DNA of 64,000 bases from Haliotis rubra. Its lineage: Eukaryota. Shown piece by piece: positions 19,582-64,000 of this stretch; within the stretch, counting starts at the first letter, position 1; each line of letters opens with the position of its first letter. Below the pieces are notes generated by a model. That model saw only the letters and a program-made list of their open reading frames with translations, had not been told where the DNA came from and made no database searches. The stretch spans positions 62,001 to 126,000 of the forward strand of contig NW_025767188.1 in NCBI RefSeq assembly GCF_003918875.1. Reading direction: 5' to 3'. The position numbers and the translations under genes were made by a program.

Positions 19582-19765
19582 GGGGATTCCCCGTCACATG
19601 ACCCGGTTTCCCGTGACGTCATTTTCTCCAGCGTGTTCTGCGCCAGGTGTTTGGAGTTTCGTCAGCAGGTGTGCGTGTTGAATATGACAGCGTAGAAACC
19701 ATGTTGCATCACGACCCGAAACATAAATATATCCCTCAACGCTGGAACCTCGTCGACTATATAAA
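19582..19765 (+). promoter_or_regulatory. Promoter of ARF-like gene A: kB site, CLEAR/M-box E-box, CRE and TATA
   Basis: GGGGATTCCCC 19582-19592, GTCACATGAC 19593-19602, TGACGTCA 19614-19621, TATATAAA 19758-19765; ATG at 19888. Confidence 0.65.
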
Positions 19766-19887
19766 CCAGGTTTAATAACACTGTATCATTCAAACTGTGA
19801 TCGAGACACAACATAAGACGACATTAACGCGTCCTGCGCTGTCCCAGATATTAAATATTGACTTCTCGTGTCAGAGTTACTCAAATC

Positions 19888-21916
19888 ATGGGTGTTATCT
19901 TGGATAAACTTGCTGACTTTACAGGCCTGTTCTCCGGGTTTTCAAGAGACCCAGCAAGAATTCTGATGGTTGGACTCGATGCTGCCGGTATGTTTATGAA
20001 TATTTATATGCAGCTACCTTTTAAACAACTTGTTAATACGGTATATTTCATTTAAAATTTACATGATAAACTTGGCATTTCACTCATGTTTTATGTATTG
20101 CTTCTTTCACAAATTGTTATGGTTATATAGATTTATTTGATATTTCATTGAAATGCTGCATGATACATTTCGAAAATTTACATAATTGATTTGAACAAAA
20201 TTTTACGTTTCACGAAACAATTGTTCATTTTTTTCAAATAGAGATGTGCGTATAATGTTTTGTTCGGAGAGATGTTACGTAAACGAATATTTATTACTAT
20301 TTACATTGGTAAAATTGAAAAGAGATAGTTTTTGTTCACGCCCAACGCACAGTACAATATATTGTAGTAACAGTGAATGTATGGATCTATGTTGTAGGTA
20401 AAACGACGATCCTGTACAAGCTGAAGCTGAACGAGGTGGTCTCCACCATCCCCACCATCGGCTTCAACGTGGAGACCGTCAGCCCCTGCAAGGGGGTCAA
20501 CTTCACCGTGTGGGACGTGGGGGGTCAGGACAAGATCAGACCCTTGTGGAGACATTACTTCCAGAGCTGCAGCGGTGAAATTTGTTGTTTGTTTTTAGGA
20601 GGGTGTTTCGTTCGGTTATTTTCGTTTTCTTATTTTAAGGGCTGAGAGTAGGTTTGGTTTTGTATTGATGAATGACAAACAAAGCCTTTCTGGTGATTTG
20701 TCACCAAGTTAATATAGAGTTAATGTACTAGAACCCTAATTTATACTATGTTCTTACATAGCCATATTTATTGGTAAAATATGTGCGCCTCCAGGTGGAG
20801 ATATGTGTTCAAGATTTGGTCGTTTCTCTCATTACGGCGTCAATTTAATATCATCTTGTTATATTGCAGGTATCTTGTACGTGGTAGACACCAACGACAG
20901 GGAGAGGTTTGTCGAGTCACGTGAAGAACTGAAGAACGTCATCGACAGCAACGAGATGAGATCCGTCCCTGTGGTCGTCCTGGCTAACAAGCAAGACTTG
21001 CCAGGTAGGGACATGGGGGAAACGTAATCTAGCCAAACCTGGATTATCAACATACACGCTTTGAGGGGCGGGGTTTTCATATTGATGTGATGGTGATACT
21101 GCTGCTGTTATGATGGTAGTTATGATGGTAGTTATGATGGTAGTTATGATGGTAGTTACGATGGTAGTTACGATGGTAGTTATGATGGCAGTTATGATGG
21201 TAGTTATGATGGTAGCTATGATGGTAGTTATGATGGTAGGTATGATGGTAGTTATGATAGCAGTTATGATGGTAATTATGATGGTAGTTATGATGGTAGT
21301 TATGATGGCAGTTATGATGGTAGTTATGATGGTAGTTATGATGGCAGTTATGATGGTAGTTATGATGGTAGTTATGATGGCAGTTATGATGGTAGTTATG
21401 ATGGTAGTTATGATGGCAGTTATGATGGTAGTTATGATGGTAGTTACGATGGTAGTTATGATGGTAGTTATGATGGTAGTTATGATGGGAATGGGGCTCA
21501 TGAAGGGCTTTGTAGGCATTTTGAAGTTGAATATACTTATGACGAGAAAACTGTGTTTTAATTACTTGATCCAGGGTAAAACATTATCCCAGATTGAACT
21601 TGTTATTATCCATAATATTTCTAGTCATCTTATGTTTTTTGTTATTGTTTTGGGTTAACGTCAATGTGTGGGAAGTACAGTCTTGAAACTAATGCCGTTA
21701 TTGATAAAACAATCATATTGATGCTGAATCTCAACATTGTTTCCTCAAGCTGCCGCCAAGTTGTCGGAAGTAGTGGACGCCCTTCACCTTCAGAAGATGA
21801 CGGACCGGAAGTGGTACATCCAGGGGACATGCGCTACGACCGGGGAGGGTCTGTTCGAGGGTCTGGAGGAAATGTCCCGACTGGTGAAAGAATTTAAACA
21901 GAGCAGGGGGCGGTGA
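19888..21916 (+). CDS. ADP-ribosylation factor-like small GTPase (paralogue A), 192 aa; exons 19888-19987, 20398-20574, 20870-21004, 21750-21916
   Basis: Gly2 myristoylation site, [36 protein letters not shown] and CAT motifs. GT-AG phase-1 introns; 579 nt with an intact frame ending KEFKQSRGR-stop. Confidence 0.95.
21105..21487. repeat. 12-bp tandem repeat (GTTATGATGGTA)n in ARF-A intron 3
   Basis: Directly visible; explains the MMVV and TTII ORFs. Confidence 0.95.
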
Positions 21917-60970: not shown

Positions 60971-62294
60971 CTATACGTTAGGCAATTTATGAGACTATTG
61001 TATCAACCAGGAACAACCCATGAAATAACAAAGGGATAATGGCGACAATAATTTACAATTGCTTTGCGTTCCTCCGATATATAAGCAGGTGCAGTTTGAC
61101 TGTCAAGTCACTCTGCATCTGAACAAACCTTGGAACGCTAGCAACTCTGATGTCATCATTATCCTGAATTCATATATTTTATTTTAAGGTAAGACATTTC
61201 CATGCGTTTCTATGTTCGTTTTATTATATGTTGAAAGTGTTTTAGGATTACTGTTTTAGATTTCGGTAACTTCAAATCATTTATATTATTGTAGATGTTC
61301 AGCTACAGGCGTGCGTTCATTTGTGTAGTTATTGTCCAATATATTGCGAAATTGTTATAATGTTTAGGAAGGGTTGAACCCCGGAAACAGGTGTACACTT
61401 ACACCTATGTAAAACTATTATGTATATTCAGGCTAATAAGAGCAGCGCTTGTATTAAAGGGAGTACGGTAGTGAGTAAATTGCACTACCGTAAAACATCT
61501 ACGAAACATCTACGATACGTGTACTAGTTAATGTTTCATTATTTTAAGCTGATGTTACCAACAGGAATCTAATGTGTTAGCTAGTGTATTTGTATCGTTG
61601 TGTGCCGTTCTCTGAACTTAAAAATATGTTCCTGTAAGGTTCTACCTGTACATAAAAATATAATGCCCAACATACGCTGATGTTTCGATAAGTATAGTGT
61701 TTATATATATGAGTACAATATGTTCGTATCAGTTATCTGTAATACTGTACCTTATCATTATTTGATGTGTTCATATATATGTATACATATGATGGAATTG
61801 AAATATTTTATAAATGTAATGTTCAAAACATGTTGATGTTCTGCGAAGCTTAATAATTATGAAGATGAATATAATATGTTCACGTCAGTCTAATGTAATA
61901 CTGTATGATTACTTTGATATGTTCATATATTGAATTGAATTGAAATGTCTTATTGAATTCACTCTGCATTTGAATAAACCTTGGAACGCTAGCAACTCTG
62001 ATGTCATCATTATCCTGAATTCATATATTTTATTTTAAAGCAAAAATTACCGTGAGACAGCGCGTTCTCAGTTCCTTTATGTTAACCTTCTAAGGTAAAT
62101 ACTGTATGCTATGCGGCGATTACCGTTTAACTTTGTTTAACTCATGTCATGAGTTATCGCCCCTGATCTTTGTAAATTTCAACCCCTCAGTGATCATGAT
62201 ATTTCTGTAATGTTTTAATGCACAGACAATATTGCCGGCGCTCATGCATTCAATCTGTATTAACATATATACTGTTAATGTACTGAATATAACA

Positions 62295-64000
62295 GACCCA
62301 CAAAAAGATAACGGTGTGACTTATTCCTGGGTGGGTGAGTGAGTGAGTGATTGTAGTTATGCAGTCATCAAGCTATATCAGAGGGGCCTGAAGTTTGTAA
62401 TCTTAACACTATCCCAGCTATAAGACTGCGACAATAAATCTTGATTCTTTACACTGCGCATTCAATGGCGATTTCAAAACACAATCACGCATTCGACATC
62501 ACTCGTCCCTTTCCGTGACATGCAAACTGTCCCTGAATGACGAGTTGATCTCGAATGAACCACGTCAACCCTGTACGGTATATCACTTCCTGTGCTCAGT
62601 TTCCCTCTACACCGGTTACCTAGGGTCTATCTCGCCTGATGATCAGTTTCCCTGCACACCGGTTACCTGGCTGTCTCAGGTAAGTGTGTTGTCACAGGGG
62701 CTGTGTCTATTCCAGTTATAACGCTACACACCTGTCCTACTGTGTACAGGTAACACTACAATGGTTCATCTAACTGTTAGGTCATCTCCAGGCACATTCT
62801 CAAATCTGGGCACCTAATATACTGCAATATTTAGACTGAGCATATTGTATGAAGTGTCTACTTTCATTAATTCCTTGATCAGCCTCTTGACTTCAATACT
62901 GAGGTCTGCTGATGTATGTGCATGTATATATATAATGTGTGTTTGCTAAACTTGTTACTGAATTGATCTCTTATAAATGCTACAGCACAAAATATGGTAA
63001 CATACCTCTACATTACCACATTATTTTACATCTAATGTATAGAAACCCGAACTAAACGTCTCCTACTTTAGATATGATAATGAGCGGGTGTCGCCATCAA
63101 CTCTGTCAGGTGATCGATATGCTCCACACGGTTCATAACTGCATGTTGTAATGCTGGTGACGACGAGTTGCAAAGATCCATTGCCGAGCTGCTCACAGAC
63201 AGGTCACTGATTCCTTGTGCTCCGTAACACCAAAACATGCCCAGTCTGTTATACTATACAATGTCATGTGGTAATGCTTGTCAACCTCAAAAGATAACAT
63301 ATTCCTAAAGCACAATAGCACAGCTCATACAACAGCACGGGGGACCGACCGCCTGACTTTCATGGCAGTGTTTCTTGAATTAAAAACCTGAACTAAATTA
63401 TGAATTAATACCTTAAACGAGCAAGGTTTGAAACCAACGAAAACAACAACATAGAAATGTGCTGTAATTAACAGTTGTATTCTAAAATTAACTAAGTTCA
63501 GAAATCAGTACAAAGGCACCACAAGTGCCCATAAACATTCGTATTGTAGCTCAACGGTTCCAGTATGTCAGGCAAAAGAGAGAATTTTGTGTTTGTGTAA
63601 ACCGTGAAATATCTGAGGGAATGTATGTTCTGTGTTTTACGTATGAAAAAGTATCCAGTATCAATATCAGGCCAGAGAAAGAATCTACAAGACTGACAGA
63701 ATCAAACCAACAGACGGTCACTTCCCTTCATCCTATATCCAGTTTCTAACGCTTCTCAAATACAGGATTGTTTGTGTATAACGTGAAATATGTGAGGGAA
63801 TGGCTGTTCCATGTTTTACGTATGACCAGAAATACAGAGCCACCCACACACGCTCACATCATACACACACAATACACACGGCCCAGTTACAACCCGTCTA
63901 CCAATGTAATCTCTCATTGATTATAGGATTTACATACAGTCGAAATTATGTTTTCATTTGTTCATTATTTCCAGAGCAGGATTTACTTGACATGGCCTTT
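62295..64000 (+). repeat. Upstream region of a further TRIM copy (copy 3); the RING exon is expected just beyond the window end
   Basis: Colinear with about 27760-29785 and 42357-43580, which end about 100 nt before the TRIM ATG. Confidence 0.85.

What the first reader, a model, noticed from the sequence alone, without database searches (positions are those of the whole stretch)
19582..64000. Co-amplified ARF-GTPase + TRIM-NHL cassette: a candidate split 'TRIM23-like' immune module
Seen: the roughly 13-14 kb tandem unit begins with ARF sequence each time (intact gene 19888-21916, relics at 36109 and 49886), followed by the 23-bp and 22-bp satellites and a TRIM gene. An ARF 3'-UTR relic (1815-2350) also follows TRIM copy 0, so ARF and TRIM have been duplicated together repeatedly. 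Established: TRIM23/ARD1 fuses a RING-B-box-coiled coil to an ARF GTPase domain and acts in virus-induced autophagy, and mollusc TRIM families are expanded. Inference: an inducible ARF-like GTPase and a diversifying TRIM-NHL sensor/E3 may form a functional pair. Caveat: only one ARF copy survives while the TRIMs are kept, so the ARF may be a passenger.
Basis: partly seen in the sequence, partly recalled or inferred. Interest (0 to 1): 0.8.

Follow-up and report, generated by a model that had tools for sequence, protein, structure and literature searches.

The report
Abalone TRIM-NHL array carrying ARF genes
This stretch of blacklip-abalone genome is a tandem array of fast-diversifying TRIM-NHL ubiquitin-ligase genes; a small ARF GTPase gene was copied along with each unit and has mostly decayed, so the two are old neighbours, not a shown working pair.

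Summary
The window is Haliotis rubra scaffold QXJH01000498.1, bases 62001-126000. There is an intact four-exon ARF gene at 19888-21916. ARF exon-1 relics sit at 36109-36217 and 49886-50280, and an ARF 3'-flank relic at 1816-2347. The 23-bp and 22-bp satellites recur in each ~13.8-kb unit. Only two TRIM genes are complete in the window: TRIM-B is intact, and TRIM-C has a mutated splice acceptor. Both N gaps are intergenic.

New points:
- The TRIM is RING, two B-boxes, coiled coil and a six-bladed NHL propeller. Its hypervariable residues lie on one face of the propeller.
- The ARF is ARF1-like and under purifying selection (dN/dS 0.14 against its H. rufescens ortholog).
- ARF-TRIM neighbourhood also occurs in H. 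rufescens and H. cracherodii, in another orientation. Other TRIM runs there, and in H. asinina, lack ARF.
- In H. rubra only 2 of 6 units examined keep an intact ARF.
- Public ARF-TRIM chimeric gene models exist because all the exons are phase 1. They encode truncated GTPases.

The best reading is a birth-and-death TRIM-NHL array that co-duplicated a neighbouring ARF. A functional 'split TRIM23' pair is neither excluded nor supported.

The parts
1..1471 (+). Last 13 coding bases (stop at 11-13) and the downstream flank of TRIM copy 0 (protein P0003).
   Evidence: Matches 32598-34094 at 89.5%. Locus L007 places the P0003 gene end at window base 13.
1816..2347 (+). Relic of the ARF 3' flank.
   Evidence: 82% identical to 22269-22809, E 5e-153.
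13575..18225 (-). ARFm: a second ARF paralog, degenerate. Exon 1 is intact; exon 2 lacks the part encoding the P-loop Lys/Thr and switch I.
   Evidence: tblastn and translation. Its ortholog is intact in H. rufescens locus L003.
19724..19887 (+). ARF-A upstream region that is also present in the unit-3 relic.
   Evidence: Alignment A1; BLAST.
19888..21916 (+). ARF-A: intact ARF1-like GTPase gene of 192 aa. Exons 19888-19987, 20398-20574, 20870-21004, 21750-21916.
   Evidence: GT-AG at all introns. Motifs present: Gly2, GLDAAGKT 29-36, DVGGQ 73-77, NKQD 132-135, CAT 165-167. A 192-aa Arf product is called in the public annotation.
22269..22809 (+). ARF-A 3' flank, the source sequence of the 1816-2347 relic.
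22864..23760 (-). Relic of a Tc1/mariner-type transposase, part of the full unit.
   Evidence: Weak HTH_Tnp_Tc3_2 hit, E 1e-4, below Pfam's cut-off. Also present after ARF-B in L002.
24068..25193 (.). 23-bp satellite, unit 1 (49 copies).
25696..26119 (.). 22-bp satellite, unit 1 (19.5 copies).
28003..28658 (+). Element upstream of the RING exon that is conserved in four Haliotis species. Inferred to be the TRIM gene's own promoter or 5'-UTR exon region.
   Evidence: 73-83% identity to the sequence upstream of TRIM genes in L003, L004 and L005.
29895..32610 (+). TRIM-B, intact, 646 aa, identical to P0001. RING exon 29895-30186; intron with a 47-bp minisatellite; exon 2 30962-32610 (two B-boxes, coiled coil, NHL).
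34182..34347 (.). Assembly gap in intergenic sequence.
36109..36217 (+). ARF exon-1 relic of unit 2. It is dead: no ATG and an in-frame TGA. The donor GT is kept.
36877..38809 (.). 23-bp satellite, unit 2 (83 copies).
39460..39730 (.). 22-bp satellite, unit 2 (12 copies).
43696..46464 (+). TRIM-C: open reading frame of 662 aa, but the intron-1 acceptor is AA at 44766-44767. Exons 43696-43987 and 44768-46464. Contains a 45-bp coding repeat at 45583-45678.
47449..47618 (.). Assembly gap in intergenic sequence, at the position homologous to the first gap.
49886..50280 (+). ARF relic of unit 3: 164 bp of upstream sequence, exon 1 and the start of intron 1. The ATG is mutated to ATT, there is an in-frame ATG at codon 5, and the donor is intact. 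Exons 2-4 are deleted.
50733..51193 (.). 23-bp satellite, unit 3 (20 copies, plus 4 more at 51755-51844).
52492..53481 (.). 22-bp satellite, unit 3 (44 copies).
55921..62289 (-). Insertion specific to unit 3, carrying a reverse-transcriptase ORF at 59624-60082.
   Evidence: Break in unit homology; RVT_1 hit, E 1e-17.
62293..63993 (+). Upstream region of the next TRIM (copy D). Its RING exon lies just beyond the window.
   Evidence: Matches 27757-29303 (89%) and 42969-43572 (92%).

Best explanation
The window is part of a large birth-and-death tandem array of two-exon TRIM-NHL E3-ligase genes in the abalone Haliotis rubra.

Each TRIM has a RING, two B-boxes, a long coiled coil and a six-bladed NHL propeller. 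The RING and B-boxes are constrained. The propeller evolves at dN/dS near 1, and its hypervariable residues sit in every second loop, which means on one face. That is the pattern expected of a family of ligases that recognise varied targets. An immune or antiviral role is an inference only.

An ARF1-like GTPase gene (ARF-A) and a second paralog (ARFm) were already neighbours of the TRIM in the common ancestor of H. rubra, H. rufescens and H. cracherodii. In the H. rubra lineage ARF-A came to lie upstream of the TRIM on the same strand, inside the repeating unit. It was then copied with the unit by unequal crossing-over, with the satellites varying in copy number from unit to unit. A later, higher-order duplication with a 67-kb spacing followed.

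Most ARF copies then lost exons 2-4, while a few stayed intact under purifying selection for the ARF's own function. So the ARF is a co-duplicated neighbour, and the array does not need one ARF per TRIM.

What is shown: the anatomy, the homology map, the selection statistics and the synteny. What is inferred: the order of events, unequal crossing-over as the mechanism, and target recognition by the variable face.
For: - Organism and locus.
- Unit map and relics.
- Census in H. rubra, reading along the scaffold: degenerate ARF then TRIM-0; ARF-A then TRIM-B; relic then TRIM-C; relic then TRIM-D; ARF-B (intact) then TRIM-E, followed by another relic.
- L002 is colinear with window 8385-42987 at 89-98% identity, and the ARF-A to ARF-B spacing is 67,228 bp.
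- The relics are about 82% identical to ARF-A, whereas other unit sequence is 88-96% identical. The ARF loss is therefore old and relic-bearing units kept duplicating.
- TRIM domains and fold: Pfam RING, B-box and NHL hits; all eight RING ligands invariant; AlphaFold2 model with helix 198-307 and 24 strands at pLDDT above 90; best PDB match is the TRIM2 NHL domain, target-normalised TM-score 0.81.
- TRIM dN/dS by domain: mostly 0.1-0.5 for RING and B-boxes, with a few noisy higher values for the short RING exon between H. rubra paralogs, against 0.8-1.1 for NHL.
- 32 of 33 hypervariable loop sites fall in alternate loops, Fisher p 1e-6.
- ARF-A against its H. rufescens ortholog: dN 0.035, dS 0.25.
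- Synteny: the order ARFm(-), TRIM(+), ARF-A-like(-) occurs at two H. rufescens loci 58 kb apart and, with the TRIM broken into two pieces, at one H. cracherodii locus.
- TRIM runs without ARF: H. cracherodii L004 and H. asinina L005 and L009.
- The TRIM has its own conserved upstream element in all species.
Against: - Linkage of ARF and TRIM survives a rearrangement between species, which selection for co-location would also predict.
- Both ARF paralogs sit next to TRIMs wherever I found them in three species. I could not check whether unlinked copies exist.
- Public gene models join ARF exons to the TRIM (P0058, P0005), so joint transcripts may exist.
- dN/dS near 1 over the propeller could be relaxed constraint rather than diversifying selection. 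No site-model test was run, and the variable loops are also the longer ones.
- Array copy number and the 67-kb repeat rest on one draft assembly with gaps.
Confidence: 0.62

Rival explanations
1. One reading: ARF-A and the TRIM-NHL proteins form a two-gene functional module, a trans version of TRIM23. In it the ligase would modify or be localised by the GTPase, and linkage would be kept by selection.
For: - ARF-TRIM neighbourhood is found in three Haliotis species despite a different orientation.
- The ARF is co-duplicated in every H. rubra unit inspected.
- ARF-A is under purifying selection.
- In TRIM23, RING-mediated ubiquitination of its own ARF domain drives GTPase cycling (PMC12075517), so an ARF-RING partnership has a precedent.
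Against: - Only 2 of 6 H. rubra units keep an intact ARF, and ARFm is also degenerate.
- TRIM runs without ARF exist in H. cracherodii and H. asinina.
- Orientation and spacing are not conserved.
- The TRIM carries its own conserved upstream element.
- The ARF part is closest to ARF1 among solved structures.
- The related scallop ARF array has no TRIM nearby.
- There are no expression or interaction data.
- Co-duplication of neighbours is automatic in segmental duplication.
Confidence: 0.18
2. Read-through splicing makes real ARF-TRIM fusion proteins: a nascent N-terminal-ARF TRIM, that is, an inverted TRIM23 architecture.
For: - The donors of ARF exons 1, 2 and 3 are all phase 1.
- The RING exon has a conserved acceptor 5 nt before its ATG with an open frame.
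- Two public models are chimeric. P0058 joins ARF exons 2-3 to the TRIM. P0005 joins a RING-exon tail, ARF exon 3 and the TRIM.
- P0058 is partial at both ends inside gap-free sequence, which suggests it came from a transcript fragment. That is my inference.
- The unit-3 relic keeps an open exon 1 and its donor.
Against: - Any such product lacks ARF exon 4 (the G5 motif and last helix). P0058 also lacks exon 1 (strand 1 and most of the P-loop). It is therefore not a working GTPase.
- Many TRIM models in this family carry unrelated N-terminal extensions (RRM, transposon-derived) through the same acceptor, so chimeras are a general side effect.
- No other ARF-plus-RING protein appeared among the 120 best ARF hits of 320-1017 aa.
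- The arrangement is specific to H. rubra.
Confidence: 0.07
3. Part of the repeat structure is an assembly artefact. The units beyond the gaps, or the 67-kb higher-order copy, could be uncollapsed haplotypes or misjoins.
For: - This is a draft scaffold with N gaps at the same homologous position in two units.
- The higher-order copy is 89-98% identical.
Against: - Units differ by 4-18% and by large indels, satellite copy numbers and a 6.4-kb insertion, which is far more than typical allelic difference.
- ARF-A to TRIM-B is gap-free.
- The same kind of ARF/TRIM mosaic is seen in chromosome-level assemblies of two other species.
Confidence: 0.08

Closest known systems
TRIM-NHL proteins (TRIM2, TRIM3, TRIM32, TRIM71/LIN-41, Drosophila Wech/Thin, Brat, Mei-P26): Marin's subfamily C, classes VII and X (PMC3503706)
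   Same: RING, two B-boxes, coiled coil and a six-bladed NHL propeller. The best structural matches are the TRIM2, TRIM3, Thin, Lin41 and Brat NHL domains. NCBI names the proteins 'wech-like', 'TRIM2-like' and 'TRIM71-like'.
   Different: No filamin/Ig domain between the coiled coil and the propeller; that stretch (322-370) is modelled as disordered and contains a variable 45-bp coding repeat. The genes have two exons and are tandemly amplified within the genus, with at least 18 models on this scaffold alone. One propeller face is hypervariable, unlike the conserved developmental TRIM-NHL genes.
TRIM23/ARD1 (class IX, subfamily D)
   Same: A RING/B-box/coiled-coil ligase and an ARF GTPase are brought together, here as neighbours and in some gene models as chimeras.
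   Different: In TRIM23 the ARF domain is C-terminal in one polypeptide, and its auto-ubiquitination drives GTPase cycling and autophagy (PMC12075517). Here the ARF is a separate upstream gene, the TRIM ends in NHL, and the chimeric models put a truncated ARF at the N-terminus. The ARF part is nearest to ARF1 among solved structures.
Lineage-specific TRIM clusters with a hypervariable C-terminal domain (primate TRIM5/22, fish finTRIM with B30.2). This comparison is from my own knowledge.
   Same: Tandem birth-and-death arrays with constrained RING and B-box, variability concentrated in surface loops of the recognition domain, and pseudogenised members.
   Different: The variable domain is an NHL propeller, not B30.2/SPRY. 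The host is a gastropod. No pathogen link has been shown.
ARF1 / class I-II ARF GTPases
   Same: The ARF part scores 156 bits against ARF1 structures over residues 4-107. All G motifs and Gly2 are present.
   Different: Longer and divergent N-terminal helix region, a basic C-terminal tail, and a genus-level paralog family (ARF-A and ARFm types) embedded in the TRIM locus.

Membership tests
TRIM class IX (TRIM23/ARD1) | N-terminal RING, B-box(es) and coiled coil | tested here: met
   Pfam RING and B-box hits; invariant Zn ligands; helix 198-307 in the model.
TRIM class IX (TRIM23/ARD1) | C-terminal ARF domain in the same polypeptide | tested here: not met
   The C-terminus is an NHL propeller. 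The ARF is a separate gene 8 kb upstream. The chimeric models place a truncated ARF at the N-terminus.
TRIM class IX (TRIM23/ARD1) | ARF moiety orthologous to the TRIM23 ARF domain | not tested
   No TRIM23 sequence was available through the tools. Among solved structures the ARF part ranks ARF1 > ARF6 > ARL1.
TRIM class IX (TRIM23/ARD1) | RING-dependent ubiquitination of the ARF, and GTPase-dependent autophagy | not testable with these tools
   Needs biochemistry (PMC12075517).
TRIM-NHL (class VII-like) | C3HC4 RING with all eight ligands | tested here: met
   C14, C17, C29, H31, C34, C37, C56 and C59 are invariant in 64 sequences.
TRIM-NHL (class VII-like) | Two B-boxes followed by a coiled coil | tested here: met
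   zf-B_box and ANCHR-like_BBOX hits at 100-143 and 158-190; one long helix 198-307.
TRIM-NHL (class VII-like) | Six-bladed NHL beta-propeller | tested here: met
   Pfam NHL, E 1e-8; 24 strands at pLDDT above 90; Foldseek match to the TRIM2 NHL domain 7b96, E 8e-16, target-normalised TM-score 0.81.
TRIM-NHL (class VII-like) | Filamin/Ig domain before the NHL repeats (as in TRIM2, TRIM3, TRIM71 and Wech) | tested here: not met
   No Filamin hit in Pfam. Residues 322-370 have pLDDT below 50 with no strands.
ARF subfamily of small GTPases | Arf domain with G1-G5 motifs and an N-terminal Gly2 | tested here: met
   The ARF-B part of P0058 hits Pfam Arf at E 2.5e-45. ARF-A has GLDAAGKT, DVGGQ, NKQD, CAT and an MG start.
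ARF subfamily of small GTPases | GTP binding and hydrolysis; myristoylation | not testable with these tools
   Needs biochemistry.
Birth-and-death tandem gene array | Colinear repeated units with intact, decaying and dead members | tested here: met
   Self-BLAST map; relics; TRIM-C acceptor defect; degenerate ARFs.

The most novel reading that the evidence does not exclude
ARF-A (and ARFm) and the hypervariable TRIM-NHL ligases are a selected two-component module of abalone innate immunity. Under this reading the ARF acts either as a trans-acting partner, with the GTPase localising or being ubiquitinated by the ligase as in TRIM23, or through read-through ARF-TRIM transcripts. That would explain why the neighbourhood survived rearrangement in at least three species.
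Probability: 0.15. Interest if true: 0.7.

Novelty: new variant of a known kind. Interest (0 to 1): 0.42.

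Why it matters
Tandem TRIM arrays with a variable recognition domain are a hallmark of vertebrate antiviral defence. Here the same pattern appears in a gastropod with an NHL propeller as the variable part. That gives a concrete candidate family for pathogen recognition in abalone, which suffer herpesvirus and Vibrio disease in aquaculture. 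In oysters, TRIM genes are among the loci linked to herpesvirus survival (PMC9437489).

The ARF neighbourhood is a tidy example of how exon-phase compatibility and segmental duplication can bring a GTPase and a RING ligase together. That is the kind of raw material from which a TRIM23-type fusion could arise. It is also a warning for annotation: several public models in this array are chimeras.

Tried and rejected
- ARF-centred synteny. I could not hand in the spliced 192-aa ARF-A by reference, and I did not type it, so I used TRIM-centred look-ups instead.
- Search for ARF-TRIM fusions of 320-1017 aa using the ARF part of P0058. The list was dominated by double-ARF models, and only P0058 itself combined ARF with RING. 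Fusions with a more distant ARF would score below the listed cut-off.
- The idea that the ARF exon-1 relic serves as the first exon or promoter of the downstream TRIM. I rejected it as a general rule. The unit-2 relic has no promoter region and an in-frame stop. TRIMs in other species have no relic but share their own upstream element.
- Deep conservation of the linkage. The Pecten maximus ARF array (L010) has no TRIM within 10 kb.
- The N-terminal exon of P0006 was not found in the window or in the fetched loci.
- Literature searches for an ARF-TRIM cluster in molluscs found nothing specific.
- Pfam found nothing for ORFs 56651-57990, 58896-59633 and 22952-23575.
- There was no Rfam or tRNA hit in the window.

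Full report
**Identity and gaps**

The TRIM open reading frame at 30949-32610 is 100% identical to NCBI 'protein wech-like [Haliotis rubra]' (P0001). Its gene lies at 91895-94610 of QXJH01000498.1 (GCA_003918875.1), so the window is bases 62001-126000 of that 838-kb scaffold.

The window has four N runs. The two inside the finding, 34182-34347 and 47449-47618, lie 1.57 kb and 0.98 kb downstream of TRIM stop codons and well upstream of the next ARF relic, so no reading frame crosses them. Their flanks are colinear between units: 33476-33963 matches 46956-47446, and 34348-35417 matches 47728-48791. They are also colinear with a paralogous segment of the same scaffold. I did not read or import letters for the gaps. 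No contig looked human, and nothing here concerns toxins or viruses of animals.

**The observation**

Tandem Repeats Finder confirms the two satellites:
- 23-bp satellite: 24068-25193, 36877-38809, 50733-51193.
- 22-bp satellite: 25696-26119, 39460-39730, 52492-53481.

Self-BLAST gives colinear units. The spacing between the RING-exon start codons of TRIM-B and TRIM-C is 13,801 bp.

ARF-A is an intact four-exon gene with canonical GT-AG introns, encoding 192 aa. Its exons are 19888-19987, 20398-20574, 20870-21004 and 21750-21916. It has Gly2 and all G motifs.

The relics are real:
- 49886-50280 aligns to 19724-20099 (81%, E 5e-108).
- 36109-36217 aligns to 19923-20031 (83%, E 7e-24).
- 1816-2347 aligns to 22269-22809 (82%, E 5e-153).

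The unit-3 relic keeps 164 bp of upstream sequence, an open exon 1 and the splice donor. Its start codon is mutated, with an in-frame ATG at codon 5. The unit-2 relic has lost the 5' part and carries an in-frame TGA. Both lack exons 2-4.

- Only two TRIM genes are complete in the window.
- Of copy 0 only the last 13 coding bases are present.
- Unit 3 is lengthened by a 6.4-kb insertion with a reverse-transcriptase ORF and stops just short of its RING exon.

**What the TRIM is**

The gene has two coding exons. For TRIM-B the RING exon is 29895-30186, the intron holds a 47-bp minisatellite, and the large exon is 30962-32610. Pfam finds RING, two B-boxes and NHL repeats. In an alignment of 64 Haliotis paralogs the eight RING ligands and the B-box ligands are invariant.

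An AlphaFold2 model gives one long helix (198-307), a disordered linker (322-370), and 24 strands with pLDDT above 90 over 379-643. Foldseek matches that part to the NHL domains of TRIM2 (E 8e-16, target-normalised TM-score 0.81), TRIM3, Thin, Lin41 and Brat. It is therefore a TRIM-NHL protein without a filamin domain.

Nei-Gojobori estimates were made on eight genes from four species:
- RING and B-boxes: dN/dS mostly 0.1-0.5. A few noisy values above 1 occur for the short RING exon between H. rubra paralogs.
- Propeller: dN/dS 0.8-1.1 in every pair, with all reading frames open.

Among 24 close paralogs, 32 of 33 hypervariable loop positions fall in every second inter-strand loop (Fisher p 1e-6), and strand cores are quiet. 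Successive loops of a propeller blade alternate between the two faces, so the variability is on one face.

TRIM-C keeps an open 662-aa frame, but its intron-1 acceptor reads AA where TRIM-B, TRIM-0 and TRIM-E read AG. No annotated protein among the fetched hits matches it above 86%. It may be a dying copy, a RING-less variant, or a base-call error.

**What the ARF is**

The ARF part scores best against ARF1 structures (156 bits), then ARF6, then ARL1.

A second intact copy, ARF-B, lies 67,228 bp further along the scaffold (L002). It is 95% identical in protein to ARF-A, and its introns are 96% identical.

The H. rufescens ortholog (L006 20169-22492, minus strand) is intact. Against it, ARF-A has dN 0.035 and dS 0.25, a ratio of 0.14. 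The ARF is therefore a working, constrained gene.

A further paralog, ARFm, lies on the minus strand at 13575-18225, head to head with ARF-A. Its exon 2 lacks the stretch that encodes the P-loop lysine and threonine and switch I. Its H. rufescens ortholog is intact.

**The wider array**

L002 (record 139.6-175.4 kb) is colinear with window 8385-42987 at 89-98% identity. So a higher-order repeat of about 67 kb, roughly five units, has been duplicated. L007 (record 49-72 kb) shows a degenerate ARF (exon 1, part of exon 3, exon 4) 8 kb upstream of TRIM-0.

Reading along the scaffold, each of six units has ARF sequence ahead of the TRIM:

| ARF state | Following TRIM |
|---|---|
| degenerate ARF | TRIM-0 |
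| ARF-A (intact) | TRIM-B |
| relic | TRIM-C |
| relic | TRIM-D |
| ARF-B (intact) | TRIM-E |
| relic | next TRIM |

Co-duplication is confirmed, but only two of the six ARFs are intact. The relics are about 82% identical to ARF-A, whereas the rest of the units are 88-96% alike. So the ARF deletions are old, and relic-bearing units went on duplicating or being homogenised without an ARF.

**Other species**

- H. rufescens: two loci 58 kb apart each read ARFm(-), TRIM(+), ARF-A-like(-).
- H. cracherodii, first locus: a similar mosaic, with the TRIM broken in two pieces.
- H. cracherodii, second locus: three TRIMs 8 kb apart with no ARF sequence at all.
- H. asinina: two TRIM loci with no ARF within 10 kb.
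- Pecten maximus: the ARF array has no TRIM nearby.

The satellites, the transposon relic and the ARF relics are absent from the other species' loci. A roughly 600-bp element upstream of the RING exon (window 28003-28658) is conserved in all four species. I read that element as the TRIM's own promoter or 5' exon region.

So the ARF-TRIM neighbourhood is ancestral to at least three species, which refutes 'restricted to one genome'. The same-strand, within-unit arrangement, however, is specific to H. rubra.

**Chimeric gene models**

The donors of ARF exons 1, 2 and 3 are all phase 1. The RING exon has a conserved acceptor 5 nt before its ATG, with an open frame, in all four species. Any of these ARF exons would therefore splice in frame to the TRIM.

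Two public models do this. P0058 joins ARF-B exons 2-3 to the TRIM-E RING exon. P0005 joins a RING-exon tail, ARF exon 3 and a full TRIM. These products lack ARF exon 4 (the G5 motif), and P0058 also lacks exon 1, so they cannot be working GTPases.

Other models in the family carry unrelated N-terminal extensions through the same acceptor, including an RRM protein and transposon-derived sequence. Among the best 120 ARF hits of 320-1017 aa, only P0058 combines ARF with RING. I treat the chimeras as a by-product of exon phase and proximity, and possibly of real read-through transcripts, not as evidence of a designed fusion.

**Verdict**

The TRIM is a diversifying TRIM-NHL and the ARF is a genuine gene that travels with it. 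However, the decay of most ARF copies, the TRIM runs without ARF, the changed orientation and the TRIM's own upstream element all point to passive co-duplication of an old neighbour.

TRIM23 membership fails on its defining feature, a C-terminal ARF domain in the same polypeptide. TRIM-NHL membership is met except for the filamin domain.

A functional pairing is not excluded. I put it at about 0.15-0.2. RNA-seq junction and co-expression analysis would decide quickly.

I found no paper describing this cluster. The general context is known: TRIM classes (PMC3503706), the TRIM23 mechanism (PMC12075517), and TRIM loci linked to herpesvirus survival in oysters (PMC9437489).

Noticed in passing
window 44766-44767: The TRIM-C intron-1 splice acceptor reads AA instead of AG, while the 662-aa frame stays open. 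No annotated protein among the fetched hits matches this copy above 86%.
   Followed up: partly
window 13575-18225 (minus strand): ARFm is a second ARF paralog, head to head with ARF-A. Exon 1 is intact, but exon 2 lacks the P-loop Lys/Thr and switch I coding part, and a 42-bp minisatellite (14906-15419) sits beside it. The ortholog is intact in H. rufescens (L003 3254-5850).
   Followed up: partly
window 8385-42987 and L002 496-35767: A higher-order duplication with about 67-kb spacing covers roughly five TRIM units at 89-98% identity and carries the second intact ARF (ARF-B). Most of the ARFm region (window 13617-17247) is missing from the L002 copy.
   Followed up: partly
window 45583-45678: A 45-bp coding minisatellite lies in the linker between the coiled coil and the NHL domain. 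TRIM-B has one copy, TRIM-C two, and paralog P0004 three, so the linker length varies.
   Followed up: no
window 30949 and 44755: An in-frame ATG lies 12 nt upstream of exon 2, inside the intron. This fits the RING-less isoform models in the public annotation (P0010, P0013, P0014, P0031).
   Followed up: no
window ~4983-9551: A dual-specificity phosphatase (DSPc) gene model lies between TRIM-0 and ARFm. It overlaps a 1.9-kb TCA microsatellite (5307-7230) that creates long artificial ORFs.
   Followed up: no
window 22864-23760 (minus strand): A Tc1/mariner-type transposase relic (weak HTH_Tnp_Tc3_2 hit) lies between ARF-A and the 23-bp satellite. It is also present after ARF-B in L002 and absent from the other species' loci.
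   Followed up: partly
window 55921-62289: A 6.4-kb insertion is found only in unit 3. It has a reverse-transcriptase ORF (59624-60082, minus strand) and unassigned ORFs at 56651-57990. A further 1.5 kb specific to this unit lies at 53652-55195.
   Followed up: no
window 7469-7629, 9893-10041, 11756-11922, 27569-27658, 32769-32918, 33617-33689: A dispersed repeat of about 165 bp occurs in both orientations. It is also present near TRIM genes in H. rufescens and H. cracherodii and looks like a SINE or MITE.
   Followed up: no
window 29229-29673, 30562-30941, 34987-35501 and their unit-2 and unit-3 equivalents: Each unit carries further minisatellites: a 74-bp repeat upstream of the RING exon, a 47-bp repeat in TRIM intron 1, and an 84-86-bp repeat downstream of the TRIM. 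ARF-A intron 3 holds a 12-bp repeat at 21107-21488.
   Followed up: no
L006 20975-21109 (H. rufescens): The H. rufescens ARF-A ortholog reads NKQE where ARFs have NKQD, the guanine-specificity motif.
   Followed up: no
proteins P0121-P0239; locus L010 (Pecten maximus): Gene models with two ARF domains are common in marine invertebrates (scallop, clam, mussel, starfish, corals). In the scallop they sit in tandem ARF arrays. Some may be merged neighbouring genes, as in the H. rufescens 419-aa model that spans a TRIM gene.
   Followed up: partly
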